64,000 bases of DNA from Asterias rubens (taxonomy: Eukaryota), in assembly GCF_902459465.1 (NCBI RefSeq), contig NC_047070.1:12400001-12464000 (forward strand), given 5' to 3'. The first letter of the stretch is position 1; the number at the start of each line of letters is the position of its first letter. Made by a program: the position numbers and the translations under genes. Under the pieces are notes generated by a model. The model was not told where the DNA came from and did no database searches. It saw only the letters and a list, made by a program, of their open reading frames with translations. This document shows positions 18,893 through 56,850 of the stretch, in pieces.

Positions 18893-20812
18893 TGATGGTA
18901 TGTCGTTACAAATCAAATCTGTTTGGCTTGTTCACTGGCCTGCCTATCGGGTCACTGTCGGCGTTCCTGAGGGGCGGTTAGAAAGCAGTCTGCTCTCGGG
19001 TTGTGAAGGAGCATTGTGAACAGGGGTTGGTTTGGTAGAACTCAGAGGAGCTGGTCACAGATGAATCCTGTAACCTCTGAGCTGACTTCCACTTTCCGTT
19101 TCCACATTGTAGGATCGAGGAGTAGTTGATTTGCTCATAACTCTACCTTGGCTCCAGGTTTTGTTAATCGGATTTTGGATGTAGATGGGTTGGTCATTGA
19201 GAAGTTCTTGGATAGGGGTACTGGTAGAGCGTCTGTTGTAGTATTGCGTTTGCGAAGACTGGTCTGCCTGCAGTATATCTCGCACATCTTCTCGATCTGG
19301 TGGAGGGTGCTGAACTGAAGGTAGTGTCATCTTGTATTTCCTTCTGTTCAGTAGCTCCGCAGGGGATGCAAGGTTTGCCTTGAGTGGAGTTGCATGGAGA
19401 GTTAGGAGGGCTAAGTTGGGATCGTCCCCCGACTCTCGACATTTGGTGAGGACTCTCTTCACTGTTTGGATATGTCTTTCAATGAATCCATGACCTCTGG
19501 GGTAGAACAGTGAGGAAGTTTGGATCTGAAATCCGTACTGCTGTGCTAGGGCTCGGAATTGGGAAGAGGTGAACTGCGTGCCATTGTCACATAAGATAAC
19601 CTCTGGGATGCCTTGTTCGGCAAAAAGCACACGTGAAACTCTTGTGATGGTGCTTGCGGTGAGGTTTTCAAGTTTGCGGAAAAACGGAAATTTCGAGAAA
19701 TGGTGTATACGGACTTTCATCTCTGGTATCTCATGCTTTTCCACAGGGGAGTGTTGAGAGTGCATCCGCAATGACCATTTCTTTACCAGGCTTGTAGCGT
19801 AGTTCTATATCGTAAGCCTGTAGACGCAGAAGCATGCGCTGTAGTCGTGGTGGGGCCTGCATTAAGTTTTTCTTGTGGATATGCTGGGGTGGGCGGTGGT
19901 CACTTTCCACAATGAATCGTCTGCCGTACAGGTAAGTATGAAACTTCTCACATCCGTACAGGACTGCTAGTAATTCTTGCTCTATGTTTGCATATCGTGT
20001 CTCTGTTGGTGTAAGAGCTTTTGATGCAAATGCTATCGGACGACCTTTTTGTACCAGGGTTGCTCCTAGTCCTCTGGTTGATGCATCAACTTGCAGTATT
20101 ACAGGCTGCTTCTGGTCGTAGTAAGCGAGAGTGGTGTCTGATGCTATCAGAGCTTTGATGGAGTTGAACACTTTTGTGTGTGATGGAGACCAGATGTACT
20201 CAACATCCTCACGAAGGAGTGTCCGCAGTGATGCAGAGAAGGTTCGCAGTTGTTTTCTGTCACCTGGGGGCTGCATAATTTCAACCGCCTTTACTTTATC
20301 TGGGTGGGGTTAACTCCATCGGGTGAGTATATCAGTCCGAAAAAACTACATTCAGTCGTTTTGATGATGCATTTTTCGGCATTCAACTTGATCACCGCAC
20401 GTCTGGTGCTTTCCATAGCTTCATGAAGGTGAAAGTCATGGTCTCTTGCACTTTTGCCGAATAGTTGGATATCGTCAGCGATGCCCACAGTGCTTTCGCG
20501 TACACAATAAGTTTCATCTATCTTTTGTTGAAATACATCCTGACTCATCCTGAGACCAAAAGGCATTCTCAAGAATTGGTATCGGCCAAAAGGGGTGTTG
20601 AATGTGGTAAAATACGTAGATTGTTCATCTAACCCGACGTTCCAATAGCCGTTTCTGGTTTCTAGGATCAAGCTTGCTAAACATTTTGGCATCGGATAGC
20701 TTTAGTATGATTTCTTCGAGAGTAGGCACAGGGTAGTGATCTCTTTTGATGGCCCGGTTGAGGTCCTTGGGATCTAGACATAGGCGCAGTCGGCCGTTGG
20801 CTTTATATCACC

Positions 20813-22381
20813 CAGGCCCGTGAGAGCACATTTTTTCAAGGGGTGCTGGATTTTCCAAATCCATCGATTCGCGGTATGCGAATCCAAAACGGCGTGGGGT
20901 CCGGGGCCCGCTTAAGGGCCCTGGAAGTTTTTTGGTCCTAGATGCTCTGTCGTGCATTCTCATCCATTATTTGCCACTTAAATTTATCTCTTGGAGGTGG
21001 GATATTATCGGTAATTGAAAATAATAATTACCCCACAATGCATTTTATTTAACACAAACACAAAGGAAATACAGCACTATAATTCTACAACGGTTCTTAT
21101 TTTTAAAAAAGCGACAGCTATGTTCCGACAAACCAGGGGGCGTCAATCCGTCTTTCGGGGAGACATAACATTTACGACGTGGGGTCCGGGCCCGCTTTAG
21201 GGCCCCTGAAAAATTTTCAGGCCGTAATGCTCTCTGATGCAATCTAGGGAGTCTAAGGGGTGATGTGCCCCTCTCTCAGATGTTGGAATTTAATGCCTAT
21301 TTCAAGGTATGATGCATCTATTTTTGCTATCATGGTTATTGTACGTAAAAACAATTATAGATTCGCAATATCCATATTGTTTCTGCACTGTAATGCTCAG
21401 ACAGCGTTTCATCCCTATCATCGTCAAAGGCAAGAAAGTTTAGGGGAGGGGGTGGGGGGTTGGTGAGTGTGGTTACATCTATTAAAGATGGAGCCTACTA
21501 TAAAGCGAAACGCAAAGCCTTTTACGGGAAAATTGTGCATTCTATAGATGCTCTGTAGTGCAGTCTTAGGCCAATAAGTAAAGTAAACAAAAGTAAATCT
21601 TCTAATAATACTATAGAGCTGTATCATAATGTTTTAAAAAATTTTACATTGTTTTTTTTAACCTGTTTTCTTGAATAAGTTGAAGAGAACTGCAGCTGGC
21701 TAAGAGTCATACACAAAGTCTCACAGGACAATAGTCATAACAGATGTTTCTTCCACGTATGGCTTAACTGGGACACCACACTTTCTTGTGATATAATAGA
21801 TAAATAACATGAAAATTATAGAATAGCAGGATTTAGGCTATACAGAAAAAATTGTGTACACATGACATTAACGGAGGTCGGCCGCTCAACCGTTGACTTG
21901 TCTTAGCCATCCGTCGAGTTGTCTCAAAGTCAAGTTGTTTGCACCATCGAGTTGTTCAAACGGACGACTTGTCCGATGGACGAGTTGTCTACCATTCGTA
22001 CGAGTTGTCTACCATTCGTACTAAGAACCGGCGGCAGTGCACAGACTTCACAACATCGCGATCGACATACACACAGCTAGACGTCTCCCTCCCTCTTCAC
22101 GCATGGCATTAGACGTATAATGTGTTTTTAAAAGCAGTTCTATCCTATCCTTGCTGCATGATTTTAGCGTAGCTGCGCCGGCTAGTGGGAGCTAAAAATT
22201 GATTTGTTATAAACTGTTACCCTTTTTTTCACTCAGGGGTTTTAGGGGCGAGTTAAAAATAGTTATTATGTTACAACCATTAACGTTCGAAAAGTAGGGG
22301 TGCTTTAGCATACTCCAGCACCCCCTTCATTTTTGGTAGGGGTACTGCAGCACCCACAGCACCCCCGCTCTCGCGGGCCTG
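20813..22381. mobile_element. Non-autonomous hAT-type element inserted in the Gypsy-1 RT
   Basis: 15-bp TIR CAGGCCCG(T/C)GAGAGC; 8-bp TSD ATATCACC (20805-20812) / GTATCACC (22382-22389). The RT text NSLVI|KPNGRLRLCLDP is split by it. Confidence 0.9.
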
Positions 22382-24217
22382 GTATCACCAGTGAGTTAAC
22401 CCAGTGTGTTGGCTTGGAAACTTTCATGATAATCGCCTTGGATTCCATCTCATCTAACTCTCCCATGAGTTTATCTCTGATCTCCAAGGGGACCCTACGT
22501 GGTGGGTGTATAACCTGTCTAGCTTCCGGATCGAGAGTGATGTGGTATTTAAAGTTCTCAAAGCAGCCAACAGTGCCATCGAAGTAATCGGGATACATTT
22601 CGAGGAGGTCAGATTTACTCCCAATATTCGGCCTCTCGAGCAGTGGTGTATTTCTGTGGATGTATTTCGGAGAACGATGTAGTGTTGGTGATTCCGATGT
22701 CGTCACCAATGGGTCAGCGAAGTGGACGCGTTGATTGCTACATGTGTCTGTCGTGAGCTTTTCCTGTTGATGTTGGACAGGATTATTTTTCTGCCCATTC
22801 TCCACCACAGTTGTTGTTTCCACTGCACAGTGAAGTGTGATCAAGTGAAGGGCTTGGCATGTCTTTAAGCCAAGGATTGCTGGCCCCGCTGCATCAGTGA
22901 CGTAGAAAACGCAGTTGTGCTTTGTGTCGTTGTACATGCATGGAATTTTCACTGTGCCCAGTTGCTTGATCTTGGATCCGCCGTATGCAGCGAGTGCCAT
23001 CTTGCTACATAGTTTCCAGAGTGCTGGGCTCTGGGTTCCCGTTACTGTCCAATTTCTCTGGAAAAATAATGCGGAACAGATGGACGGGTAAAAGATTGCT
23101 CTGTGCATCAGTGTCTACTTTGCACCGGAGCATGATTGGTTTTCTGCCTTTCTGGTTTATGCGTAACTTTGCATTTACTTCATCTCTCGTGTCATCGGAC
23201 GAGCCAATACTGCTGACTTCTATGGTGCCAATGGTGAGGTATTCATCAACAATTTCATCCTCGTTAAGGTAATGCACTCGTCTGCGTGGAGATTTGTGGC
23301 GAGGTTTGCCTTTTGGGGGTTTCCTACATCTGCATACTGATTGCCAGTGGTTGTCTTTCCCACAGTTTCGGCATGTGCTGCCATAGGCGGGGCAGTTGCT
23401 CTTTGGTACTAGCTTCTGCACTCGGCCGCAATTGTAGCATGTAGGCAGTTTGTTCCTGGCTGTTTTGATCTGGTTGTGCGTGATGCATTTATGGACTTTT
23501 CAGTCGTGCCGGCTTGTTTCTGGTAGGGACTTGAGTTGATTGGTAGTTGCTTCATGGCTTTGAGCAACATCGATGGCATCATTTAGTGTTAGTTTCTCGT
23601 CCCCTCCTATCAGCACTTTCTGTACGTCTTTGTGTGACATTGCCAGATCAATTGGTCAACAAGACGATCTTCCATTTTTTTGTCCTCTCTGTATTTGCAT
23701 TTGACAGCTATGGCTTTCATCTTTGTCACAAAATCAGCAACTGCCTCATCGACATTTTGTCGCATGTCTTGCAATTTGTATCGGTAGATTCGCTCTTTTG
23801 ACCTTGGTTCCAAGTGTTGCTGGAAGCGGGACAGTAGCTTATCTGGCTTTTTTCTGTCTTCCTCTTCTTCAAAGGTCCAGCTATTGTATTTATCTAAACC
23901 TTGTTCTCCTACCCATAGAAAGAGATAGCTTGCTCTCTCTTCATCATTTGCAGATTTTAGTACGCTGGAAAACATGAGTTCACATTTTTGTTTGAACCTG
24001 GAGAACGTTACTACAACATCTGGCGCTTCCCAGTCCATCTGGGGAGCTGAGACTGCAGAGCTGAATGCCATTGTAATGTGTTGTATTACACAGTATAGTA
24101 TAATTTATAGTTCTCAGTTCTGTTTTTAACGTTTTGATTTAACGTGAGCGAAAATGGCAAGAAAATCACACATTTATATGATGACTTTGTTTTGCTACTC
24201 ACATAAGTCTTCAGTTT

Positions 24218-29097: not shown

Positions 29098-32000
29098 CAG
29101 GCCTTCATTTTGATAAATACGAGGAGAGCTGCAAATCGCTCTCCTTAAATCTCCAAAGTGAATTAAGGAGAGTGATTTGCTCTCATTAACAAAAATCAAG
29201 TTTGAGCTGCAAGGAAAACGATTTACTTTTCGCTAACAAAACCCAAGTTTAATAAACACATACTCATACAAACCAACCTGCTACAGGTTTTAGATTTGTT
29301 TTCTTTGTAAACAAGTGGCAAAGTAGATAAAAGAATGAGTTTGTTTAAAACTAATTTGTTTTGATATTTGTTGTTGCTTTGACATTGATAAAGGTTTTGC
29401 TGTCTACTTTATTGTGTCTTATTTATGTTTGGAGAAATCAAAAAGATGAGTCATCTGAAGTGTTATCAGGGTTAGAAGTAGTTGCTTCAGCACCATCACT
29501 GGTCTCACGTTCATCTGATTCAGACCCAGATTTGCCATTCACATCTTCATCGTCAGGCTCAGCAGACCCTCCGCTGTCACTATCTGTATCAGAGCTGCTA
29601 CATGAATCGATGTCTGAGATTTGCAGGTTGTCTTCTGAGAGCTTTATCTTCTTTGGACCAACCTCTACACCATCATCAGGAACTAGTTTACGCCTCTTCA
29701 ACATAAATAATTTGAGAGCATCTTCCAGGATGTCGTCACGCTCGTGCTCCTCCCAGACAAGATGATTGGCCTTAATTAGAAGAAGATCCTCCATTGTGTT
29801 GTGGTTGAGGGAGAGCCTTCGATCAGACAGCATTGATGTCAGGATGCTAAAACCACACTCAACAGTGCTGTTGCTCACTCCGATGGCCATGGCTACCTCA
29901 ACAAGTAGGCACATGTTCGGCATGTCATTTCTCCTGTACTTGATAATCTGCCCCCACATATCCTTGGTCTTCGTACCTCTGTAGAATGTCTTGTGCAAAA
30001 CTTTCAACATCTGCCACTCTCGCTTAATCTTATTGGACTGGAAGCCAACAGCAGCCAGTGAAGTTGAGAAGTGAGCAGCAACAGCTTCCATTGCTTCCAC
30101 CTCAGCGGTCACATCATCCTCTCTCCAATTAGCTGGATTCAGCCAAGACATGCTTGTAAACACGCTCTCGTTGTTGAATGAGCTGAATCGGTCATCAAGT
30201 CGCTTCATCAACAAAGGAATGCACTTCTGACAGAGACTTTCGCTGACATCATTTACACCATGGCGAAGATTACGTTGGGCCATTTTCTCCAAAGAGACTG
30301 TTGAGTATTGCCGATTTTCTGCACTTCTTCTCATGTGTCCTTCTTTTGGAAGATCCCGGCTAATTTGACTGCTGTTTGGGTCATAAGTATATCCAGCTTT
30401 CTGGATCAGGGAGGCAGAACTTTCATCTTCAAGTAGGCCCTGCAAGCTGATCTTTGTCACCTCAACTGCAGGGAGAACTTCAAAAGCGTGGATATCCCCT
30501 CTCTCAAACTTCAGGGACAGAGCTGAGATGATGTCGAGAATCTCGAAGAAGAGACAGCTGGTGGCAAGGAAATCAGGTCGTCTCAGCTTCTTCAGAATAC
30601 CTCTTAGTTTGGCATTCAGGTTAGAGTGAGTGCTGTGCATGATGGAGTTCTCAATAGCCAGAGCAAGTGGGATCCAGTTGTTGAGAAGGATGCGCAGACC
30701 ATTTCTCTGGTGGCCCACAAAACGCGTTCCGTGAACCTTTGGAAACTTGTACACTTGACATTCCAGTGCTTTTCCGGTAGCTTCAAAGTGCCTCTTGAAT
30801 TTTCCGGATCTTTTCATCAGGTAGTAGATGGTAACCATCAGCTCTTTCACCTCAACAAGGGCAGCCTCATTCATAAGGGCGTCTTTTACTGCCAGCTCCA
30901 GTCGGTGTGAGATGCAGTGAATCATAACAAGCCAGGGGCGGCCGTCTCTCTGTAGTCTAACCAAAAGACCATTGTAAACTCCGGTATTGACAGATGCTCC
31001 ATCTGCAGTAGCCGACACCAAAGCTTTTGTGTATTTGTCAGCAGGGAGCTTTACCTTCTCTGTCAGTGCATGTTTGATAGATTTGTGAAGATTTCCTGCA
31101 GTCGCATCTCCATAACTGTCTACGTTCTCTAGAGCAGCTACAAAGAATTTCGGATGCCCATCTTTCACGACCCGAACCATCACAAGCTCTTTCTCGTTTC
31201 CAGTTTTTCTAGTCTGAGATCCATCACTCAGCACAGAAAATGCAGGAGCTGAACACAATATGGATGTTAACTTAGATCGGATGACATCTGCGATTACATG
31301 AACAAATTCTTTCGCTCTGTTGCTGCTCTCTGTTCCTTGGATGAGTTTCACTCCATTTGCTTTCTGTACTCTCACCAAGGTCTTAAAAGTGGAAAGTGGT
31401 AATCCATCAACAGCCATGATGTAAGCACTTCTCAGCAACTTTCTATATGCCTCGTCTGATACACTGTGGATGGCCTGGGCTATGTTGGGCTGGGTACGTT
31501 TGATTGGGCCAGGCGTAGCAACGACACCTGAGGATGATGCCTCTCCTTCTTCACCAAGAAGTCTCTGATATTCCAGACCAATGGAATGCGCCTAAGGAGG
31601 AAGAACAAAATAAAATTTAACAAATGTTATTGCTCAAATGTCACTGTTTAATTGAAGGTAAAGTATGCATTCAATAAAAAGAAATGCATCATTCAAGATG
31701 AAAACAATACATTTTGTTTGCTGGTTTCAAAAAACAAGGGATGGTTTCAAAATTCAACCATGAATGATATGTCCAGATAAATCTTTTTATTTTACCGATA
31801 ATCTTTAAAACAAAGTCAAATTGTGTAAACAAACTCAAAAGTGGATTTCAATTTCTCATTTTGAATTAGATTTGTTTTAAAGATTGGAACTAAATTATTA
31901 CTTTGTTTGAGCTGCACGTATAAAAGTTCACTTCATGCTCAGCGACATACAACCAAGAAAGAATAAGATTTTTAAAATCCACAAATGAATTATTTGATAC

Positions 32001-34165
32001 ATTAATGATGCCCCTCACAATAATTTATGCATATCATCCCCACAATTTTGTTTTTAATTGTCTGCTTACTCCGCTGTTAATGCTCCCATACATTGGAAAA
32101 AATAAAAACATGTAAGTGAAAACATGGCAGAGAATACGATTGTCTTAACTGTCACAGTAATTATCTTTTAGAAGATTTTATATTGCTCTGCAAGTTGCAA
32201 TAATTTAATTGAAACCTATGCTAAAATAAGTAGCAGTGGATGATGCCCCTTTCTTTTTAGTTTTGAACAATTATTATTCAAGCCTCCAAACTTAGATATA
32301 TTTTTGTGACACACGTTCCCTATGTGATAATAGTGTGTTTACTTAATTTAATCTTAGCTTCGATATTATTTTTTCAATTCCAGTAAAAGAAGCTATTCAA
32401 TTGATCCCTATTCAAAATCATAGGAAAACGCGTTTAAGATAACAGAAAAACGAAACATTTGTGATCGCAGTCCTCCAGTTATTGTATCGCGTTTCTTTGG
32501 GGTCACGACCGCTACTGACTGCCCTGACCAGGCTCACATACAGCGCCGACCACCTCACATCACTACTGTGGTCCTTTCTCTATGAGCGTAATGACAGCAC
32601 GAGCAGCGCAGCGAAGGGCGGCACGGTATGTACATGTACATGTGTACATGTACGAACATGCACAGTGCAAACATTATCCATATGCATGAGCTACAATACA
32701 ATGTGCGGTTGTGATTGGTCTGGAATTGTTTCCTAAATATTTGCATACAAAGGCCATCCAGCGAGCTACACCATTCTGCACGTGGGAAAATACTACACGG
32801 GGTATCAACCATATGCATCATTACACGATATATGGCTTGTGATGGACCCCTCCCATAAAATATGTTAATCACACTCACGCATGCGTACAGACCCTGTTGG
32901 TTGGCAAACGCCATCACGCACCCATTAGCCGTGTACAAAACAGCGCGATGTTCCCTTATTTTGCCAACCAAAACGTTACATGTAGTGCGCACGCGCTATG
33001 TGCAATTTACATATTTCATGGGAAAGGTCTATTGGTCTGGCGTAGTTGAGCGACAGTGGGCGCCAAGAGTGAAGGACGCTGGCAGCAGTTCAGAACATTT
33101 TCGAGGGCGGGACTTGAATTCGAGCCAAAAGTGTTGTAATTTTGGGACGCACGTGTGTTTTAAGTCTACGGCAAATGTTTCTGTTTACCCTTCTTTCCTC
33201 CATGATGTATCTAAACGTTACCCAGTTTCTTTGCTCTATGGTTTACCATGTAGTTTAGTGGCGAGTCGAAACATGGGCAAATTGAATTTGGCACTTCTTA
33301 ACAATTATTTAAAGAAAATAATAATTTGTCATATTATACTTGATCAAAATTATTTAATTATAAAACAATACTTCTAGGTCTATCCAAAACTCACCTTTGA
33401 TGACAGATGTCGTGTGGCGGTGTACTTGGTGACAAATGCAGACCCGATTACGTACGCCTCGATGTCTTTTTGGGCTTGCCCCCGAATTCTTGTATCCTCC
33501 TTGATTTTATTGATGAAGGTCCGACAAACCTTACACCAAATTTTGGTGACCATGATGCGGTCATTTATTGGTTTCGTCTCGTAACCATAGCTATTTAAAT
33601 TCCACCTCAAAAACGTTGATAGCTGAACACTTGACATTTTAATGGCATTTATAATCTAGCAAAACAAAACGTGCATGCTCTACACTACCAATAATTAGAA
33701 CAAGCAGCCCGGCCGCGAGCTATGAACTTACTTACAAAATTCCTAACCAATCACAGGCGTGTATTTGTGGTGCCCGTGAATATTTATTACCAATCGTCCA
33801 CCAGCTAGAATACTATAGGCCCCGCCCAGATACGTTTGTGTGCAACCAGCTGGCCGGCCGGGGACCGGCATCATCAAACACGCCGCATGAACGCACAACT
33901 CACACACTTTGATACAAAACGTTTGCCTCTGCCAAGTTCAACAATCGCGGGTTTAAAACACAAAACAAAAAACTTCCGCTCATTAAATTTTGCCATTGCC
34001 AACTCTGAAGCGGCTTGTTTCGATCACCAGTTTCAGGTTTTGGGTTTTGATTAAAAAATGCTCTTGTTAAATTTGTAAGGAGCGCTTTTTTTTGCTCTCC
34101 TTGGAAAACATTAAGGAGCGCGGAGGAGCGCGAGTGCGATCGCGCTCCTTAAAAATTAAGGTCTG
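29098..34165 (-). mobile_element. Full-length hAT-superfamily DNA transposon (5068 bp)
   Basis: TIR CAGGCCTTCATTTT / CAGACCTTAATTTT, flanking CCTTAT duplication, AGGAG(C/A)G subterminal motifs. An empty-site paralog has a single ATAAGG at 42833-42838. Confidence 0.9.
29438..33637 (-). CDS. Spliced hAT transposase (ZNF862-like type), ~798 aa; exons 33637-33395 and 31591-29438
   Basis: Donor AAG|gtgagt, acceptor ccttag|GCG, phase 0, no stops. Zn-finger-like WCKVC...RHLSSK|AH spans the intron. Catalytic-type motifs VLSDGS, TADGASVN, HCISHRLEL and TVECGFS. Confidence 0.88.
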
Positions 34166-37287: not shown

Positions 37288-40200
37288 ATGGCATATGTAC
37301 GCCATCTTGATGGTTCTACAATGTCTTATTGGACCAAGCGACGTAATGTAGCAAAACAAATTAACCAACACTTGCAAGACATAGTAGATCATGATGAACA
37401 AATTGTAAATGAAACACTTGTTTTGGCAGTTGCGCGTGCAGAAACAATAGATCGAGAACTTATTGAACGCTCAGTAGAAAGTGGGACTCCTGGGAGAAGT
37501 GATGAAGAGCCATGTTCTGAATCTTATCCTGATTTCTTGATTGCAGATGATATTGATAGTGCTGGGTTTAATTATTCTGATAGCGAGTCCGATAGTGATA
37601 GTGATGCATCTCGACTTCCCGAATGTGATCCAAACTCGGAACTTCCCAAAGAGCTAAAACATTGGGCCATCAAACACAACATAACTCACCTTGCCCTTGG
37701 GGAACTGTTACCGGTACTGCAGAAATATCACTCCTCATTGCCTAAAGATCCCCGTACTCTGTTGTCAACAGGTAGATTAGACGGTATCAAAAATATAGAT
37801 GGAGGACAGTATTACCATTTTGGGATAAGGGCTGGCATTGTTGCGACTTTCATGTGCAATCATTCAATCTTCCACAGTTCTCAGAAATTCCACCTTCAAG
37901 TGAATATTGATGGTCTACCAATTTTCAAAAGCAGCAACACACAGCTTTGGCCTATCTTAGGCTTATTGGTTAATCTACCTCAGTCACACTTAAAAGCTGA
38001 GCCATTTGTAATAGGCTTGTTTTCAGGAAAGGAAAAGCCTAAAAACCCAGAAGAATTCTTGTGTGATTTTGTAGATGACATGTCAGATATTGAATCTAAT
38101 GGACTAGAGTACCAGGGACAATTACACAAAGTGTTTGTGTCTGCAATAATATGTGATGCGCCAGCTAGAGCCTATGTCAAGCAAGTGAAGTCTCATTCTG
38201 GTTATTATGGTTGTGAGAAGTGTACTTTTCGTGGTGTCTACGCCGGAAAAATGACATTTCCGAAACTTAATGCCCCATTACGCACTGACCTCTCTTTCAC
38301 TAATAGGTTAGACAATAATCATCACATAGGACCCAACCCATTGAGCCGTCTTTCCAATCTAGGGATGGTTTCAAGATTTCCCCTAGATTATATGCATCTG
38401 GTTGCTTGTGTTCTGGATGAAAGGTCCACTGAAATATCGCCTGGGACGACGTATGTATGGTGTTCCATAGAGGACAGCCTCCGTCGGAGTTGTGAGTTGT
38501 CCGTCGGAGTTGTGAGTTGGGGCGTCGGAGTTGTGAGTTGGGGAGTCGGAGTTGTGGGTTGGCCGTCGTAGTTGTGAGTTGCCCGTCGGAGTTGTGAGTT
38601 GGGCCGTCGTAGTTGTGAGTTGTCCGTCGGAGTTGTGAGTTGGCCGTCGTAGTTGTGAGTTGGGCCGTCGGAGTTGTGAGTTGGCCGTCGTAGTTGTGAG
38701 TTGGGCCGTCGGAGTTGTGAGTTGGCCGTCGTAGTTGTGAGTTGGCCGTCGTAGTTGTGAGTTGGCCGTCGTAGTTGTGAGTTGTCCGTCGGAGTTGTGA
38801 GTTGGGGCGTCGGAGTTGTGAGTTGGGGCGTCGGAGTTGTGGGTTGGCCGTCGTAGTTGTGAGTTGTCCGTCGGAGTTGTGAGTTGGGCCGTCGTAGTTG
38901 TGAGTTGTCCGTCGGAGTTGTGAGTTGGCCGTCGTAGTTGTGAGTTGTCCGTCGGAGTTGTGAGTTGGGCCGTCGGAGTTGTGAGTTGGCCGTCGTAGTT
39001 GTGAGTTGGCCGTCGTAGTTGTGAGTTGTCCGTCGGAGTTGTGAGTTGGCCGTCGTAGTTGTGAGTTATTTGACATTCTATCATTTTTTGTTAATAGTGA
39101 AAACGCCCATTCCTATTTTCATTTATTTTATAACATCGTAGAGAAAACGTTTTTTAAAGATACCTTACAGTTTAGGCCGGTTCGCAGGAATTAAAGATGA
39201 TGGTTAGCCCGTATTCCTCAACAAAATGAAAGAACAAAATATTTACATATTTTTAACGCCAGGAACTGTAGGTAGAACGATTTTTATCCAGACCATTTCA
39301 TTCTGATTGGTTGAGCTCCGGTCAATCAGGAGAATGTGCAACTTACTGAATATTCATGACTGTTCGTTTCGCGCACACTGCGAAATTGTCAGCTATAATG
39401 TGTCACTTTGTGTACAGAAGTACATAATATTCAAGCACCAGACTGCTGCCCAATGTAAATTATTGAAATTGACGTCATAATACAGGAAAATGAAAAGGCT
39501 GATCCAGCCATTCACTGTATTTTGTAATCTTTGAAGTATATATAAAGTAAGTGGCAACAACTCTATATCCTGGGATAATTGCAATTTAACATATTTTGGC
39601 TTTCAGATCGTCTAAAAATCTGGCAATGCATCTGTAAATTGCTACTAGTTTCCCGGGGGATCCATAAGAAGTATAGTTTTTGTTTTTGTTTGAACAGCAA
39701 ATAAACCCACCAAGGATACAAGTCAATAAAACAAACTCAAGGCATCGTCAGATTTATGTCTATAATTTGTTATTTGGAAGCACAGCTTGCATACACACAG
39801 GTCACAGCTCGGGTATCAGGAAAATTTGCATAGTTCCGTTGGCTTATGCGTTCATGCGTTCGTATTTCCGTTTACAACAAACAACATATAAATTATTTCA
39901 AGTTAACCAACTAAAACACTATTCATCCATACCTAGTCAATCCAACTTACATAACACTTTCAAATACTAAAGTTTTAGTATGTGTTTGTGTTTGTTTGTT
40001 TGTTTGTTGGGGTGTTTGTTTAACCTGTTCGTTGAGTGAAATTGTTTGTCCTTTTGTCTCTTGGTTGGACTGACACACCTCTTGGTGACAGTGCAGGCAC
40101 TATTGTCAGTCCTGGCAAACCTGTAGTGTTGATGTCTTTCTGTTGTCCTCAGTCGTGTAGTACTTTTTTCTTTCTTTTTTTCTTTTACTGCCTGCCATCC

Positions 40201-41717
40201 TTTTTATATATCTTGATGTATCCCCCTTGTTACTGTTTTCCAATACAGATGTATGTTTTTATATAATTAATGTTTTAAAGAGTTGTTTCCTTTTCGTATA
40301 AATTTTTGTAATTTTTTGTATTTTATGTGAATTGCCAAATAATAATAATAATAATAAATGATAATAAAGGATGATTTGACCATCTTTGGACTAATTTAAT
40401 GATAGGCATACACTTTAAATTTTATTTAATTTTTATTTAATGTTAAATTGCTATCGGGGTGTAAAAACATATAACGCTTTCATGGTGCCTTGAACGAAAA
40501 AGAATTTAGTGAAAGATTAATGCTAGTTCGTTATAAGGCCCGCATCCTACCTGCAGTTATTAAAGAATATGTTACAATTCATAAACAACATTTCGAAGGG
40601 GCGTAGATAAATATAAAATATCAGATCTGCAACTGACAACATAGTGCTGTGCGAACTAAACATAGGCCTAATTTCCCAATAAAAGCATCGAACACATGGG
40701 TCCATCCATTTCCTGTAGGCATAGGCAAGCAAAAGTGACGAATCGATGGATTCAGCAAGGTATAATTCATCACAATCGGAACTCAATCACATGTGTAGAA
40801 GAACCCGGAAGTAGGCATACGCCACCTATTGACCATTGCAGTTTAGTAAACAAAATAAAAAGTCCGACGGCCAACTCACAACTCCGACGGCCCAACTCAC
40901 AACTCCGACGGCTCTACTCACAACTACGACGGACAACCCACAACTCCGACGGACAACTCACAACTACGACGGACAACCCACAACTACGACACACAACTCA
41001 CAACTCCGACGGCCCAACTCACAACTCCGACGGACAGCCCACAACTCCGACGGCCCAACTCACAACTCCGACGGACAGCCCACAACTACGACGCCCAACT
41101 CACAACTCCGACGCCCCAACTCACAACTCCGACGGACCAACTCACAACTACGACGCACAACTCACAACTCCGACGGACAGCCCACAACTACGACGCACAA
41201 CTCACAACTCCGACGGACCAACTCACAACTACGACGCACAACTCACAACTCCGACGGCCCATGGAGGTAGAATTAGAATTCTACCTCCATGGACGGCCCA
41301 ACTCACAACTCCGACGGCCCAACTCACAACTCCGACGCCCCAACTCACAACTCCGACGGACCAACTCACAACTACGACGCACAACTCACAACTCCGACGG
41401 CCCAACTCACAACTCCGACGCCCCAACTCACAACTCCGACGGACAACTCACAACTACGACGGCCAACTCACAACTCCGACGGCCCAACTCACAACTCCGA
41501 CGCCCCAACTCACAACTCCGACGCCCCAACTCACAACTCCGACGGACAACTCACAACTACGACGGAGGCTGTCCTCTATGGAACACCATACGTATGAGAT
41601 TGCAGGTCTCTGAAACGCTTGTATCTCTTCGCTCTAACATTCCTCATGAATTTGCTAGGAAACCACGTTCCCTCACTGAATTGGACCGATGGAAAGCCAC
41701 TGAATTCAGATTGTTTG
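37288..41717 (+). pseudogene. EnSpm/CACTA (CMC)-type transposase, frameshifted, interrupted and truncated
   Basis: VNIDGLP, LWPIL, ICDAPARA, GYYGCEKC, PLDYMHLV. It resumes after 41591 as MRLQVS...IPHEFARKPRSLTELDRWKATEFRLF. Confidence 0.88.
38455..41591. mobile_element. Foldback-type element with ~0.6-0.7-kb inverted arms built of 20-21-bp tandem repeats
   Basis: Perfect 28-bp outer TIR GTATGGTGTTCCATAGAGGACAGCCTCC. Arrays GTCG(G/T)AGTTGTGAGTTG(G/T)(G)CC at 38481-39066 and the reverse complement at 40863-41565. The target duplication reads as GTAT or CGTATG. Confidence 0.92.
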
Positions 41718-42048
41718 CGTAGCGTTAATGTAGTGTATGGATAGTACGCCAGGCCTAATACGGTTTTGTTTTGCAAACTAAAACAAGGAGAACGTCTTGT
41801 AGCCCCATAGCCTTGAAGTGTGACGTCAGATGTTCAGGCTGAACGTCTTGATCGCTCGGCCCCTCAGCGGGGGCCGAGCAACAACGTCTTGCACCAAGAC
41901 TAGAACGCTGGAGGAGATTGGTTCAAAAGAGGGCGCTGTTATTAATTTGTCTGTGCAAAAGAAGCAGGTCAATTAGAGGTCAACAGTTCTCCGTGCCATC
42001 CATCTGTCCAAAATACAACTTAACAATTTAGTTTGGCAAGAAGTAAAA

Positions 42049-49613: not shown

Positions 49614-52045
49614 TATTATTATTATTATTATTTATTTGACCTCAACAAATACAAGTACATCAAAAAGCACAGCAAAAGTTAACGAAAAGCAACGAACCAA
49701 TCAAAATAATAACGAATACAATAAATATACAAGCAAAAAGCACACAATAAATATAAAAAATAAAAATAAAAACCCAGAACAGAACATGACAGGAGGGCAA
49801 CTAGATGAGCAAAAAAAAGGAATGAATTTAAGAGGAGCATGCAGGCATGGGGAGTAAATCAACTGAGGGAAACAACTGGACAGACCAACAAGGAACAACT
49901 TATGTGGGTCAGGAACAACAAAAGTAAACTTGATTACTGTTGCTCGGAAGCATGTTGTCCCATGCATAAGTAGCACTAATCCAGAGGATCAAACGAAACA
50001 CAATGGACATAGAACTGACTTTACAACAATAGTGATTAGGTTCACCATGCCTGCAAGCACCAGCAAGTTAAAACTAGTTAAGAGGTGGGGTTTAAACAGA
50101 CATCTCTAAGTTGGCGGAGAAATGTCGGCAGAGGAGAGATTACAGCAGCGTCCCGAATATGTGAGGGGAAAGTATCCCATAACCTTGGAAATCGATGGGA
50201 AGGTGAATTGAACAAAGAATCTGTGCGAGCGGAGAGATGGCAGAATTTAGAGTGTGAGGATGACGTGGATTGATGACGGTATTTTCACTGAGAGATTCGC
50301 AGTATGAAATGCCGTGCAAGACCTTAAAGACAAAGGAGCTCAGTAAATAATTACGCCTGTGTATCAAGGGGTGCCAATGGAGCCGCTGCAATCTGTCTTC
50401 GTACGACATTTCTCCTCGCCTTTGGCCAAGAGCAAGACGGGTGGCTGTTCTTTGAACTCTTTCACGTAAATGTTGTTGAGATGAGGTGTAAGGGTGCAAT
50501 GCTGGTAAACCATACTCTAGGATTGGGACAACTAAAGATCTATACAAAGAAAAAATGGCTTTAGGTGAGGAACCCCTGGCAACTGATCGGATGAAACCTA
50601 AGAGGCGATTTGCTCTAGCTACTATGGATGAGGTGTGTGTTGCCCAGGATAGGTTGGAGTCTATTGTGAGACCCAAGTATTGAAATGATTTGACTGCTTA
50701 AGTGGATTGTTGCCTAATTTGTAGATTGGAGGGTGGATGTGTCTGCTTCTAGTGATATGCAAGACTTTGGTTTTACCAGCATTAAAGTTCATGTCATTGT
50801 TATCACACCAGTTTTTAAGTCTGTCTATGTCGAGTTGAAGTGTTTTCATCATCAGGGTTTTGTATGGAACGGTATAAGAGAACGTCGTCTGCAAACAATA
50901 CACAGTTGGAGGAGATTGAATAAGAAATGTCATTAACAAAAAGATTGAACAATAGCGGTCCGAGTACACTTCCCTGTGGTACGCCAGAAGTAACACCAAC
51001 CCATGGAGAAACCCCGCCCCGGAAGAGGACACGTTGTCTGCGACCAGTCAAAAACGACCTAACCCAATGCCACAACTCACCCCGCACATTAAACGATGTT
51101 GCCAGTTTTTCAAGCAAGGTGTGATGCGGCATCGTATCAAAGGCCTTTGACATGTCTAGGAAAACGGCATCTACTCTTGGGGGGGCGGCGTTTATCCAGG
51201 GTAGATGACCAGGAATGCATGATGTTGACCAGTTGGGTGACACAACTTCTGTGCTTCACAAAGCCATGCTGATTAGAGTTGAGGAGGCCAAATGCGCTCA
51301 ACTGATCATTAATAGCAGCAGATACAATGCGCTCGAGAACTTTACAAAGCACAGAAGTAAGAGCAACCGTTCTATAGTTAGTAACTAATGACTTGTCGCC
51401 CTTCTTGTACACTGGCCTTATGTTAGCGCATCGCCAATCATCAGGTAATTGTCCTGTGCTCAACGATGCACTGAGCAACGAACAAAGAGGGTGGGCTATT
51501 TCTGGAGCAATTTTGTTAAGGATATTTGGCAAAATACCATCAGGTCCAGGAGATTTATTCGAAGGGAGCTTTTTGAGTGTAGCGGCAATTTGGCTAGCAG
51601 AAACGGAAATATGAGATAACTCAGGAATGTGAAGTGAACATCGCGGGGGATTGTGGGGTACAGGACCTGATGGTTTACAAACAGAAGCAAAATAATCACT
51701 GAAAGCAGAGGAGATTTTGTCAGGGCAAGTCAGCTTACGATTGTTGTGATTAAAGGATGGAGGGGGAGGAGATTGTTTACGGCTTCTAACAAAGGACCAA
51801 AACTGACCCCTGTTATCGTCACCTTCGAACAATCTATTTACATATTGCCAGTAAGCCTTACAGGTGGATTTCTGAACATTGTTACGAACAGATTTGTACA
51901 AGTTCCAATCAAGGGAACGACCAAATTTGCGAGCTAAATTGAAAAGTTTATGTTTTTTGTTGATCAAGTTCTTAAGTTCACGAGTGATCCAGGGCGTGTG
52001 ACGGGACTTGCGTTTGGTAACCTGTGGAATAGAGTCTCTGATAGC

Positions 52046-52210
52046 TGTTATGTATATGTTATACCGCCCTCTTGTGTTGGTAACTATAGGCAGTTGCCAC
52101 GCGGGCAGCCATCTTGTATTACATGTGACTCCTGAGAGTTAGAGAACATGACCCAATGATACTACAACAGAAATGTGTCTTTTGTCTCTATTTATAAACT
52201 ATAAATAACA
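52046..52210 (+). repeat. 5' LTR (165 bp)
   Basis: Differs from the 3' LTR at about 3 positions. Confidence 0.97.
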
Positions 52211-52223
52211 TGGTGTCAGAAGT
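52211..52223 (+). promoter_or_regulatory. Primer binding site, tRNA-Leu(CAA) type
   Basis: TGGTGTCAGAAGT directly after the LTR. Confidence 0.85.
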
Positions 52224-52674
52224 AGAGGTACTTCGCCTGATCTACAAGGATTCCAAGTGCAATTTCGCGAAGGAAATTCTGGAATTTGAACTCTGAAAAC
52301 GGAACTTTAGAACGAGTTTCCACATCAACACTTCACGACGAACGTGTGCGAGAGTGAATCGCCACGCGACGCTGTACGCTGTGTGTGAACTCCATATTGC
52401 TACATGGAAATAGGTTGTGTACGTGTGACTATAATCATCGGACTGAACTATAACTTACGATTGCAAAGAGTATCATATGAATGAACTTGGAGGTGAACTG
52501 TTAGTAGTAGTATACATTTTAGACATAAGATTACGAAACACTTTCTCATGTGTTTTTCATGTGGTGTTGTTACATGAATCTGTATTCCCACAGAACTTTG
52601 TTGGATTGTTTGATTGAGATATTGTGAATTTATTGCAAGAGTATTGAACTGTGCTATTTTCTAGCTAATTTATA

Positions 52675-55600
52675 ATGGAAACTGATGCCCATACAAGTTC
52701 TAGAACGAGGGTTCCACTGCCAAGACCCTTAGATCTCCAGTCTGTCAATTTAAAAAGCAGCTGGGAAAAGTTTAAACAGGTCTGGGACAGCTATGAAATC
52801 ATAACGGGACTTGATAAAGATAGTGATAGGGTGAGGATAGCACATTTCATCACTGCAATAGGTCACGATGCCCTAGATGTACACAATGGTTTACCATATA
52901 AGACTGAAGATGAGAAGAAGGATTTCACTGTAATTTTAAACTTATGGGAGAAATATTGTGTAGGGAAGACCAACATAACATATGAACGATATAAGTTTAA
53001 TTGTTGTGTTCAGCAAAATGAGACGTTCGACAGTTACTATGTGCGCTTGCGGAAATTGGCTTTAACATGCGAATTTGGGCAACTAACGGATGAATTAATC
53101 CGTGACCGGATTGTCTGTGGAATCACAGATAATGCCACCAAAAAGAAATTGCTCCAAGAACCAGAACTTAATTTGAACAAATGTCTGGATTTATGCAGAG
53201 CCACTGAAACATAAAAAAGTCAGTTGAAGATAATGTCGAGCGATCATGTTGCAGAGACAACTGTGCATGCTGTGAATAAAAGGAAAACGCACAAAATGCA
53301 AAAGACACAGGCAAAGAATGAAACTATAAATTGCCGTTATTGTGGTCAACGTCATGAATTGATCAAAACCGAATGTCCAGCATTTGGGAAAATCTGTAAA
53401 AAGTGTGGAAAATCTAACCACTTTGCTGAAAAATGCATGACCAGCCAGTTTAATCAATATCAGTCTGGCTCTAAACTCCAATCCAAAATGAGGGGCAAGG
53501 TTAACGTTGTACAAAGTGACAATTCATCTGAATCAGAATTTGAGGATGAGGTTGAACAGTGTTTGTGGCTTACTACTGTTGTCATGAACGAGGAAGTTAA
53601 ATGTGTTGATGAACACATAAATGCCCAAAACACCAAGAAGATATATGCTCTGATGAAAATCAAAGGAAACCATAGAGCAACTAAGTTTCAAGTGGATTCA
53701 GGAGCCACATGCAATGTCATACCAGAGGCAAACCTTCCTTTTGGTACTGAAATAAAAGAATCAGATCAGAAGTTGTCGATGTACAATCAGAACACTATGC
53801 CGGTACAAGGAACTTGTAAACTACAGATCAGAAATTTAAAGAACAGAAAGAAGTATCTGGTACCATTTGTTGTAATTAAAGGGTGTAAGCAAATGCCATT
53901 GTTAGGATCAAGTACTGCTCAACAAATGAAGTTGATTGAAGTTAAACATGAGAATATAGCTGTAACTTTAAGTGAGAACTGTACAGTTAAGGGTGATACT
54001 CAAGTCGCATACACACTTCATGATCACGCGCGGAACAACGAACAAACTTTATCGACTCACACATGCAAAACGAAGGAGGAGATCTTCAGAGATCACGCTT
54101 GTGTTTTCACTGGATTAGGTCACTTGCCAGGAAAAGTGCGTCTACAAATAGAACCGGACTCACAACCTGTGGTAATGCCTCCACGACGTGTTCCCATCGC
54201 AATTAAACCTAAGTTAAAGGAAGAACTTGAAAGACTGGAACATCTGGAAGTCATAAAGAAAGTTGAAGGACCAACAGACTGGGTTTCCAGCTTGGTAAAT
54301 GTTATAAAACCGAGTGGTAAACTGCGTGTCTGTATCGACCCACAACATCTGAATCAAGCACTCAAACGAGAACAATATCCACTGCCAGTCATTGATGATG
54401 TCCTGCCCAAGCTAGCAAAGGTTAAGATTTTCAGTAAGGCAGACTGCAAAGAAGGATTTCTCCAGTGTGAACTTGATGAGGAGTCATCTCATCTTACTAC
54501 ATGCCAAACACCATGGGGCAGATATAGATGGTGTCGACTACCTTTCGGACTCTCACCTTCTCCAGAACTTTTCCAAATGAAATTGGATCAGTGCCTCGAA
54601 GGGTTGCCAGGTATTCACACTATCGCAGATGATATTTTGATCACAGGCCAAGGTGAAACTTACAAGGAAGCAGAAAGTGATCATGATGAGAATATGACAC
54701 AATTCCTCAATCGCTGTGAAAAAATGAACATCAAACTGAACAAGGCCAATTTTGAATACAAGTGTGACGAAATCACATATATTGGCCACCGCCTCACAAA
54801 CAAAGGACTCAAACCGGATCCAAACAAAGTGGAAGCAATTCTGAACATGGGAACACCAGCAAATGTTGAAGAAATACAGAGATTTGTTGGCATGGTTAAA
54901 TATCTAGCCAAATTCCTACCAGATCTGTCTGACATCAGCGAACCACTCAGACGACTAACACATAAAGATACTGAATGGTGTTGGACAGAGGAACAATCAC
55001 AAGCATTCCACACAATCAAGCAACGTCTGTCAACAGCTCCGATTCTTACATACTTTGATCCCAAAGTAGCGACAGAGGGTCAGGGTGATGCGAGTGAAAA
55101 AGGACTGGGATTTGTCTTACTGCAAAATGGACACCCAATCACATATGCTAGTAGAGCTCTAACGCCAGCTGAAACGCGATACTCACAGATTGAGAAAGAA
55201 TTACTCGCACAGATTTTCGGTCTTGAGCGCAACCATGAATATACTTATGGCCGACAAATGGTTTTATGGACTGATCACAAACCACTAGTCTCCATATCAA
55301 GGAAGCCGCTTGCAAATGCACCAAAACGCTTACAACGACTCCTACTCAGGATGCAAAGATATGATGTAAATATTCAGTACAAACCAGGTCCTGAAATGTA
55401 TCTGGCAGATACGTTATCGCGTGCATATCTGAAAACCAGTAATCGCTCAGCTGTTGAGGAAGAAGTAGAGAGTGTGCACATGATTGATACAGTACCAATC
55501 ACACACAAAACCCATGCACTGATCAAAGCAGCAACTACTGAGGATGAAAGTCTACAAACTGTCAAACGCTATCCTCAGCGGTTGGCCCGAAGACAAACGA

Positions 55601-56850
55601 CAACTTCCTACAATCGCTCATGCATATTACAGCGTACGGGATGAACTATCATATCAAGATGGAATCATTTTTCGCGGAGAACACTGTGTTAATCCTAAAT
55701 CAGCTCGTCCACGAATTCGACAGAGACTGCATAAGGCACACATGGGTATTCAAAGTACACTTCGCAGAGCCAGAGACACAGTATATTGGCCAGGCATGAC
55801 ACATGAGCTCACTGACTACATATCGAATTGTGAGACATGCAACACGTACCAAGCAGTGCACACAAAGGAACCTCTGATCAATCATCCCATACCAAGCCAC
55901 CCTTGGGAAAAGATTGGAGTAGATTTCTTCACGCTGGACAGCAAAGACTATTTATGCACTGTGGACTATTATTCTGATTACTTTGAGATTGATAGCCTAC
56001 CACATAAGAAGGATGCCAAAACTACAGTCAAACGCCTAAAGCGTCACTTTTCAACGCACGGTATTCCGGCTTTCATCTACTCGGACAATGGCCCCCCTTT
56101 CAACTCACACGAATTCGCTAACTTTGCAAATGACTATGAATTTCAACGGGTCACCAGCTCACCAGAATGTCCACAGAGTAACGGTAAAGTAGAAAGTGCT
56201 GTTAAGATCGCAAAGACACTACTCCGAAAAAACGCAGATAGCAACGGAGATGTTTATCAAGCTTTGTTGGCATGGCGAAATACACCAACTGAAGGAATGG
56301 GAAGCTCTCCAGCTCAAAGCTTTTTCGGAAGCGAACGAGAACCGGTTTGCCAATCTCACCAAAGCTACTCAAACCAAAAGTGCAGAGTGACGTCAAAGCA
56401 AAGAAACAAGACAAATAAGCTCGTCAAAAACGTCACTATGACAAGAACGCAAAAGAACTGCCAAAGTTAAAGACAGGAGACACAATACGTATCAAACCAA
56501 GCGCGAATCGCACAAACAGGCGTTGGGAAAAAGGACAAGTACAAGATCAAGTGAACATCAGGTCTTACAAAGTAAGAACAGAAGATGGACGCGAATACAG
56601 ACGCAACAGAAGACATCTCAAACTCAGTTCAGAATCTTTCATACCGCAACACGAGATTCAATTTCCCACAAATGCCCAAGACGAGTCAACAAAGGATACG
56701 ACCAAACAAACACAGAACGCGAATGGAGGTACTCCACGAAACACGGAAAACACAGAAAAGACTACACCACCAGAGACAGAATTGACAAACATCAGACAGA
56801 GCACTCGAGAACGTAGAGCGCCAGCATACCTAAAGGACTATATAACTTGA
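52675..56850 (+). pseudogene. Gypsy-2 gag-pol with one in-frame TAA (53212-53214) and frameshifts near 55560 and 56330
   Basis: gag, CCHC knuckles, QVDSGATCN protease, LPFGL/IADDIL RT, GDASEKGLG RNase H, HHCC + GVDFF/SDNGPPF/SNGKVE integrase. Confidence 0.95.

What the first reader, a model, noticed from the sequence alone, without database searches (positions are those of the whole stretch)
38455..41591. Foldback transposon with modular tandem-repeat arms that matches no obvious superfamily signature
Seen: a 3.1-kb insertion splits an EnSpm transposase exactly at CGA CGT ATG|AGA. It has a perfect 28-bp unique outer TIR, then about 28 (left) and about 32 (right) inverted copies of a 20-21-bp unit, around a 1.8-kb AT-rich core with no recognisable ORF. 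The target duplication reads either as 4 bp (GTAT, termini GTATGG) or 6 bp (CGTATG, termini TATGG). Known: sea-urchin TU and Drosophila FB elements have tandem-repeat arms but, as recalled, 8-9-bp TSDs. Inference: a possibly undescribed foldback family whose transposase is unknown, with the repeats acting as binding sites.
Basis: partly seen in the sequence, partly recalled or inferred. Interest (0 to 1): 0.75.

Follow-up and report, generated by a model that had tools for sequence, protein, structure and literature searches.

The report
IS3EU-type foldback transposon in starfish
This is a real, recently multiplied, gene-less hairpin-shaped jumping element of a starfish genome; its ends and its 6-base target duplication match the published signature of the little-studied IS3EU transposon group, so it is a new family of a known kind, not a new kind of transposon.

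Summary
Window 38456-41590 is a 3,135-bp insertion with a perfect 31-bp terminal inverted repeat, arms of 29 and about 33 units of 20-21 bp, and a 1.8-kb AT-rich non-coding core.

The genome holds about 20 complete copies and about 10 partial ones. Cores are 96-98% identical. Ten of 14 copies examined have a perfect 6-bp target duplication, so this copy reads CGTATG with ends TATGG..CCATA; the 4-bp reading is wrong. Two paralogues of the interrupted host transposon carry the target once, which gives an empty site.

A 6-bp duplication, inverted repeats over 30 bp and ends TAYGG..CCRTA are the published signature of IS3EU/GingerRoot (PMC12730594, PMC10045372).

I found no transposase-coding copy with these ends.

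A longer, diverged version of the element also lies, without a target duplication, at the centre of seven 11-17-kb foldbacks. These have 189-bp satellite arms and 8-bp duplications. This is unexplained.

This scan already reported IS3EU foldback elements elsewhere in this genome (s1-150412, s1-150310). No searchable paper describes a foldback layout for IS3EU.

The parts
38450..38455 (.). Left copy of the 6-bp target site duplication, CGTATG
   Evidence: It matches 41591-41596. The paralogues of the host sequence carry this stretch once. Reads show a joint that skips 3,141 bp, which is 3,135 + 6.
38456..38486 (+). Left terminal inverted repeat: 31 bp, perfect, starting TATGG. The first 14 bases are a small palindrome, TATGG-TGTT-CCATA.
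38481..39067 (+). Left arm: 29 tandem units of 20-21 bp
39068..40862 (.). AT-rich non-coding core, 1.8 kb. It is 96-98% identical to the cores of the other copies.
39972..40368 (.). An unrelated dispersed repeat of about 385 bp inside the core. It is present in all copies of the family, so it was there before the family spread.
   Evidence: core positions 913-1309 match many other places in the genome at 83-85% identity.
40863..41565 (-). Right arm: about 33 inverted units of 20-21 bp
41260..41291 (.). A 32-bp palindrome inside the right arm. It consists of two fused 15-bp ends (CATGGAGGTAGAATT) of another transposon and is flanked by a 7-bp duplication, GACGGCC.
   Evidence: The same 15-mer ends an unrelated repeat at L058:7955-7969.
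41560..41590 (-). Right terminal inverted repeat: 31 bp, perfect, ending CCATA
41591..41596 (.). Right copy of the target site duplication, CGTATG
37288..38455 (+). Host ORF interrupted by the insertion. It is a decayed transposase-like gene, probably CACTA/EnSpm-like. It resumes at 41597 and stops at 41722.

Best explanation
The element is one copy of a young, non-autonomous foldback family of the IS3EU/GingerRoot superfamily of cut-and-paste DNA transposons.

**Shown**
- It is an insertion.
- It has a 6-bp target duplication and ends TATGG..CCATA.
- It belongs to a family of about 20 complete and about 10 partial copies with nearly identical cores.
- The arm arrays vary widely in length between copies.

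**Inferred**
- An IS3EU-type DDE (integrase-like) transposase, made elsewhere, moves it. That enzyme would recognise the terminal roughly 25-31 bp and cut the target with a 6-base stagger.
- The 20-21-bp units are its subterminal binding sites. Their period is about two turns of the helix, so repeated sites would lie on one face of the DNA.
- The arrays grow and shrink by slippage or unequal exchange. This gives unequal arms and the foldback shape.
For: **Family and insertion**
- The 31-bp end occurs 33 times on each strand of the genome with 3 or fewer mismatches. The reversed control pattern occurs 0 times.
- Of 14 copies, 10 have a perfect 6-bp duplication, 2 match at 5 of 6 positions and 1 reads as 7 bp. 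The chance of a perfect match is 1 in 4,096 per copy.
- Window positions 38449-38455 and 41590-41596 map to the same 7 bases of a paralogue on contig 15. One of the 7 is a coincidental A.
- Contigs from four sequencing runs join 38448 to 41590, skipping 3,141 bp.
- Cores are 96-98% identical across copies.
- Arms range from 153 to 1,354 bp, while most cores stay near 1.8 kb.

**Superfamily signature in the literature**
[quoted passage not shown] GingerRoot also makes 6-bp TSDs (PMC10045372; PMC6839031).
- An IS3EU relative in a fungus has 6-bp duplications without a consensus sequence (PMC8232023). The duplications here likewise show no consensus.

**Parallel for the binding-site idea**
- The title and abstract of a Galileo paper (P superfamily) report multiple binding sites for the transposase's THAP domain in the long inverted repeats (PMC3688188).
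Against: - No copy with these ends encodes a transposase. All 66 ends, and all 22 places that hold the arm-core junction, lie in non-coding copies or fragments.
- Scans of the genome with IS3 and IS481 transposase models were dominated by retrotransposon integrases. They gave only one hit near an end of this type, at contig 15 position 5,648,506, about 2.8 kb outside a 14-mer end. That could be chance.
- The ends also fit four of the five positions of the hAT end consensus YARNG, which I quote from memory. An intact hAT with a 6-bp duplication lies in the same window.
- A diverged long version of the element lies inside larger elements that make 8-bp duplications. A second transposition system therefore touches this sequence.
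Confidence: 0.75

Rival explanations
1. It is a non-autonomous derivative of a hAT family that makes 6-bp duplications (the 'hAT6' type) and is moved by a hAT transposase.
For: - An intact hAT6-type element with a 6-bp duplication lies at window 29098-34165 (note s1-175525). I read its ends, and its ORF carries a weak hAT dimerisation domain.
- TATGG fits positions 1, 2, 4 and 5 of the hAT end consensus YARNG, which I quote from memory.
Against: - The resident hAT6 ends read CAGGCCTT and CAGACCTT, and are unrelated to these ends.
- None of the roughly 10 hAT6-like transposase places in the genome lies next to a TATGG-type end (compared).
- As I recall, hAT subterminal binding motifs are short and scattered, not kilobase-long 20-bp arrays.
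- TAYGG..CCRTA is a literal published IS3EU end motif.
Confidence: 0.07
2. The small family is the inner domain and middle of the 11-17-kb satellite-armed foldbacks that has broken loose. Both would be moved by that family's own, unidentified transposase, possibly of the Mutator/Foldback or P type.
For: - Seven giant copies carry the same end and the same repeat units inside their arms, with no target duplication at that junction.
- Their three-part arms resemble those of Tetris: a unique outer part, a satellite of about 190-220 bp, and an inner part (PMC4079207).
- The giant core holds a possible decayed THAP remnant.
Against: - The giants make 8-bp duplications and start with ACCGAACGG. The small family makes 6-bp duplications and starts with TATGG. 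One enzyme is unlikely to do both.
- Relatives of the giants with about 78% similar outer ends exist without the inner end motif (searches compared with 5, 23). The outer element is therefore independent and the inner one looks like a passenger.
Confidence: 0.08
3. It belongs to a still undescribed superfamily, and its ends and duplication length merely coincide with those of IS3EU.
For: No transposase could be linked to the family in this assembly.
Against: Three independent signature features match a described superfamily. Earlier notes of this scan, which I did not check, report that this superfamily is present and active in this genome with arrays of about 21-bp repeats.
Confidence: 0.08
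4. It is a local inverted duplication or an assembly artefact, not a mobile element.
For: None beyond the palindromic shape.
Against: - Dozens of dispersed copies have different flanks and their own duplications.
- Paralogues provide an empty site.
- Core contigs are present in four independent sequencing runs.
Confidence: 0.01

Closest known systems
[quoted passage not shown]
   Same: 6-bp target duplication without a consensus sequence, TA..TA ends (literally TAYGG..CCRTA), and inverted repeats longer than 30 bp.
   Different: - This family encodes nothing, and its partner transposase was not found.
- Arms built of 0.15-1.35 kb of 20-21-bp tandem units around a small core (a foldback shape) are not described for IS3EU in any paper I could search.
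- The nearest published hints are tandem repeats or satellites similar to IS3EU elements in Hydractinia, oyster and Tribolium.
Galileo (P superfamily) of Drosophila
   Same: Long, internally repetitive inverted repeats that give a foldback look. The repeats hold multiple transposase-binding sites (PMC3688188). Arm structure varies strongly between copies (PMC3573991).
   Different: Galileo makes 7-bp duplications (from memory) and encodes a THAP-type P transposase. The element here makes 6-bp duplications and has TAYGG ends.
Drosophila FB and Tetris foldback elements (assigned to Mutator)
   Same: Arms made of tandem repeats, usually no coding capacity, and a source of satellite DNA (PMC4079207).
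   Different: Their duplications are 8-10 bp. The small family here does not fit. The 11-17-kb giants that enclose it, with 189-bp satellite arms and 8-bp duplications, resemble Tetris more closely.
Sea-urchin TU elements
   Same: An echinoderm host and arms with a unique outer domain followed by short tandem repeats.
   Different: Their superfamily is unknown to me, and no TU sequence was available for comparison.
hAT families with 6-bp duplications (hAT6)
   Same: A 6-bp duplication. One intact member lies 4 kb upstream in this window.
   Different: The ends differ (CAGRCCTT against TATGGTGT). No hAT transposase lies near any end of this family.

Membership tests
IS3EU/GingerRoot | Target site duplication of 6 bp | tested here: met
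   - 10 of 14 copies have a perfect 6-bp duplication, 2 match at 5 of 6, and 1 reads as 7 bp.
- The paralogue empty site fits 6 bp.
- The read joint skips 3,135 + 6 bp.
IS3EU/GingerRoot | Ends TA..TA, in the detailed form TAYGG..CCRTA | tested here: met
   The ends read TATGG..CCATA in all copies. The motif is taken from PMC12730594 and PMC10045372.
IS3EU/GingerRoot | Terminal inverted repeats longer than 30 bp | tested here: met
   A perfect 31 bp, continuing at 96% over 111 bp.
IS3EU/GingerRoot | Moved by a DDE transposase of the IS3EU/GingerRoot clade, that is, an autonomous partner with the same ends | tested here: inconclusive
   - No coding copy shares the ends or the arm-core junction.
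- Scans with IS3 and IS481 models gave no hit inside any copy.
hAT (6-bp type) | End consensus YARNG and a hAT transposase partner | tested here: not met
   - Position 3 of the end is T.
- The ends are unrelated to those of the resident hAT6.
- No hAT6-like transposase lies near an end of this family.
Foldback/Mutator (FB, Tetris) | Target duplication of 8-10 bp | tested here: not met
   The duplication is 6 bp. The Pfam MULE domain model (PF10551) gave no hit in or near any copy.
P superfamily (Galileo) | Target duplication of 7-8 bp and a THAP-type transposase | tested here: not met
   - The duplication is 6 bp in the small family.
- No THAP hit lies inside any copy.
- The only trace is a weak THAP-like remnant (E 0.08) in the long version inside the giants.
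Dada | 6-7-bp duplication with insertion into small-RNA genes (feature recalled from memory) | tested here: not met
   The targets are unrelated sequences and no RNA gene lies at the site.

The most novel reading that the evidence does not exclude
The family may be more than an ordinary deletion derivative. No coding partner with its ends exists in the assembly, yet a long version of it sits exactly at the centre of seven 11-17-kb foldbacks without a target duplication. Those foldbacks have satellite arms and move with 8-bp duplications.

The most novel reading not excluded is a two-level 'transposon within a transposon'. An IS3EU foldback would have been captured in the middle of another foldback. 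The outer arms would then have been made symmetrical up to its ends, for example by hairpin-primed repair. The two are now carried together, while the inner part can still move alone with a different enzyme.
Probability: 0.2. Interest if true: 0.55.

Novelty: new member of a known kind. Interest (0 to 1): 0.35.

Why it matters
- **For IS3EU biology.** IS3EU is one of the least studied superfamilies of eukaryotic DNA transposons. One paper calls it 'poorly characterized', known mainly from Repbase (PMC8232023). A young family of about 30 copies with clear ends and duplications and highly variable repeat arms would be a good substrate for finding what an IS3EU transposase binds.
- **For foldback elements.** It adds IS3EU to the superfamilies (Mutator, P) in which the foldback shape has arisen. 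This supports the view that the shape evolves repeatedly by loss of the gene and growth of the inverted repeats (the Marzo 2008 proposal as summarised in PMC4079207).
- **For the host.** This copy has no visible effect, because it sits in a decayed transposon gene.

Tried and rejected
- **ORFs.** I looked for long copies with a transposase. The 5-6-kb copies and the cores of the giants have no ORF outside repeats longer than about 165 aa and no significant Pfam hit.
- **Further loci.** I tried to fetch candidate autonomous loci: contigs 6, 13 and 32, and the single-ended TATGGTGTTCTATA group. I did not try to read those letters by another route.
- **Coordinate-only scans of the whole genome.** I ran HECT, IS3 (37), IS481 (61), the window's hAT6 transposase (60), MULE (68) and THAP (80). 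None lies inside or directly beside an end of this family. The integrase models are swamped by LTR retrotransposons, so this absence is weak evidence.
- **Core and junction searches.** The core and the arm-core junction occur only in known non-coding copies.
- **Metagenomes.** A scan of metagenome contigs for the 20-mer end found nothing.
- **Insertion polymorphism.** Reads show an empty-site contig at about half the depth of the flank. I rejected this as evidence of polymorphism. A paralogue is 100% identical over the right flank, and both it and the contigs leave the window sequence at 41716. The contigs are therefore probably the paralogue.
- **Rfam.** A scan of the element found nothing.
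- **The 4-bp reading.** It arises only because CGTATG happens to extend the inverted repeat by a few bases in this copy (I12). Other copies exclude it.
Full report
**1. What is there**

Window 38456-41590 is a 3,135-bp element.
- Its two ends are a perfect 31-bp inverted repeat, starting TATGGTGTTCCATAGAGGAC. It is found only at these two places in the window, with no match expected by chance.
- About 25 bp of the end are unique. Tandem units of 20-21 bp then begin.
- Tandem Repeats Finder gives 28.9 copies at 38481-39067 and 34.4 copies at 40863-41565.
- My own parsing gives 29 units on the left and about 33 on the right. The consensus is (C/G)CGTCG(G/T)AGTTGTGAGTTG(G/T)(G), with GGAG and GTAG forms alternating, which explains the 41-bp higher period.
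- The arms are 53-58% G+C and strongly strand-skewed. The 1.8-kb core is 24-37% G+C, has no ORF outside the arrays and no Rfam match.
- The first 14 bases of each end form a small palindrome, TATGG-TGTT-CCATA.

**2. It is a mobile family, and the duplication is 6 bp**

- The window lies on contig 10 of a 417.6-Mb assembly.
- The 31-mer occurs 33 times on each strand with 3 or fewer mismatches. The reversed control occurs 0 times.
- The matches form about 20 pairs 2.8-5.1 kb apart, about 10 single or truncated ends, and 7 pairs inside much larger elements (see section 5).
- In 14 copies that I fetched, the six bases outside TATGG..CCATA are identical on both sides in 10. Two differ at one base. 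One fits 7 bp, or 6 bp plus an extra base. One is broken.
- In this copy the duplication is therefore CGTATG (38450-38455 and 41591-41596).
- Cores of the other copies are 96-98% identical to this one. Arm lengths range from 153 to 1,354 bp. The arrays therefore change far faster than the rest of the element.

**3. Empty site**

- The interrupted host sequence has two paralogues on contig 15, at 97% and 94% identity. Both match up to window 38455 and no further.
- The right flank, 41590-41716, matches the same two places at 100% and 98%.
- In coordinates, window 38449-38455 and 41590-41596 fall on the same seven bases of the paralogue. The target is therefore single there. The seven bases are the 6-bp duplication plus one coincidental A.
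- Contigs from four public runs show the same joint, 38448 to 41590, skipping 3,141 bp, which is 3,135 + 6.
- I first read the half-depth empty contig in run X1 as heterozygosity. I withdraw that. All empty-site contigs leave the window sequence at 41716, exactly where the paralogues do. They are probably the paralogue, so insertion polymorphism is not shown.

**4. Which superfamily**

- No copy I hold has a transposase.
- The signature, however, is a described one.
[quoted passage not shown] They also place GingerRoot (6-bp duplications) in the same lineage.
  - An IS3EU relative in a fungus shows 6-bp duplications without a consensus, as here.
- TATGG..CCATA, a 31-bp inverted repeat and 6 bp meet all three features. 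The lead came from earlier notes of this scan (s1-150412, s1-150310). I tested it only against the literature and this family's own features.
- The hAT rival:
  - The intact hAT6 in this window has unrelated ends, CAGGCCTT and CAGACCTT.
  - None of the hAT6-like transposase places in the genome lies next to a TATGG-type end.
- What is missing is the enzyme.
  - The ends, the core and the arm-core junction occur only in non-coding copies.
  - Coordinate-only scans with IS3, IS481, HECT, MULE and THAP models gave nothing inside or beside a copy.
  - The family may be cross-mobilised by an IS3EU element whose ends share only the first bases.
  - The 14-mer TATGGTGTTCYATA marks at least three further groups of short elements: 58 and 54 places on the two strands, against 2 and 5 for the control.

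**5. The larger elements**

- Seven copies with the end variant ..CCGTTG are not flanked by a duplication. Their flanks are inverted repeats of each other.
- Moving outward from the inner end there is a second, diverged copy of the terminal 20-mer. Next come about 20 copies of a 189-bp satellite. Last is a unique 355-bp end starting ACCGAACGG.
- These elements are 10.8-16.6 kb long. They have 8-bp duplications: two perfect (CAATTTCT and CGCACGAC) and one imperfect.
- Their inner part shares about 0.7 kb of core with the small family at 82% identity. It also holds a possible decayed THAP remnant at Pfam E 0.08, which is not significant.
- Relatives with about 78% similar outer ends exist without the inner end motif. 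The outer element therefore seems independent, and the IS3EU-type element looks like a passenger.
- I cannot explain how it came to sit symmetrically without a duplication. Symmetrisation of a hairpin-prone centre is a guess.
- The three-part arm resembles Tetris of Drosophila virilis.

**6. How it most likely works**

- Shown: it is an insertion with a 6-bp duplication, it is multi-copy and young, and its arrays vary in length.
- Inferred:
  - It moves by cut-and-paste, using an IS3EU DDE transposase supplied in trans.
  - That enzyme recognises the TAYGG end and probably the phased 20-21-bp units. The abstract of PMC3688188 reports a parallel case: multiple binding sites for the Galileo THAP domain in its long repeats.
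  - The foldback shape arose by loss of the gene and growth of the arrays, as proposed for foldback elements in general (Marzo 2008, as summarised in PMC4079207).

**7. Novelty**

- This is a new family of a known superfamily.
- No paper in the searchable library combines IS3EU with a foldback layout. This scan has already noted such elements elsewhere in this genome.

Noticed in passing
L051:3840 to L052:5308 with L037 between them (contig 16, 3992119-4006382); six more copies on contigs 1, 4 (two), 7, 11 and 20: Giant foldbacks of 11-17 kb. Each has a 355-bp unique end, about 20 copies of a 189-bp satellite per arm, and then the IS3EU-type end and its 21-bp arrays. The outer duplication is 8 bp and the inner junction has none.
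   Followed up: partly
window 41260-41291: A 32-bp perfect palindrome inside the right arm, made of two 15-bp ends (CATGGAGGTAGAATT) of another transposon. It is flanked by a 7-bp duplication (GACGGCC) and looks like an ends-only stub or an excision footprint. Reads show 1-2-bp variants at its centre, and many contigs have unmatched ends at 41259.
   Followed up: partly
window 39972-40368: A dispersed repeat of about 385 bp (83-85% identical to many other places in the genome) with an AT-rich (AATAAT)n-like tail. It sits in the core of every copy of the family, so it was carried along when the family spread.
   Followed up: no
window 41717-41910: The host transposon copy stops matching its two paralogues at 41716. 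Just beyond lie a very high-copy short repeat (contig breaks at 41809 and 41840 in all runs) and a stretch, CAGGCCTAATACGG at about 41750, that resembles the end of the window's hAT6.
   Followed up: no
contig 17 at 8990036-8990384; contig 10 at 11445081-11445120; contig 12 at 3988703-3988742 (coordinates only): The terminal 20-mer is itself repeated. There are seven or more copies with a 42-bp period on contig 17, and exact tandem doublets at the ends of two ordinary copies.
   Followed up: no
contig 12 at 3986039-3993647 (L016-L020) and contig 4 at 15751594/15753217 (L044): Rearranged copies. In one, a copy is nested in another and three right ends lie about 803 bp apart. In the other, a right end and its flank are duplicated 1.6 kb apart.
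   Followed up: no
L037:2174-2328, and the same place in the other giants: A possible frameshifted THAP zinc-finger remnant: MSTRCIAAGCSK.. followed in another frame by ..LCSKHFEPS. Pfam gives THAP at E 0.08, so this is suggestive only.
   Followed up: partly
window 19055-24071 (-) and 51137-56470 (+): Two Gypsy-type LTR retrotransposon bodies. The first has gag, protease, RT, RNase H and integrase. The second has RT, RNase H, integrase zinc finger and integrase core.
   Followed up: no
contig 1 at 1949888-1951567; contig 4 at 3441261-3442738; contig 5 at 514709-515386 and 1639459-1640544; contig 8 at 5617656-5618736; contig 12 at 16061094-16062629; contig 16 at 10977179-10978968 (coordinates only): Short paired elements of 0.7-1.8 kb that share the terminal 14-mer TATGGTGTTCCATA but not the rest of the 31-mer. 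They are probably sister miniature families of the same superfamily.
   Followed up: no
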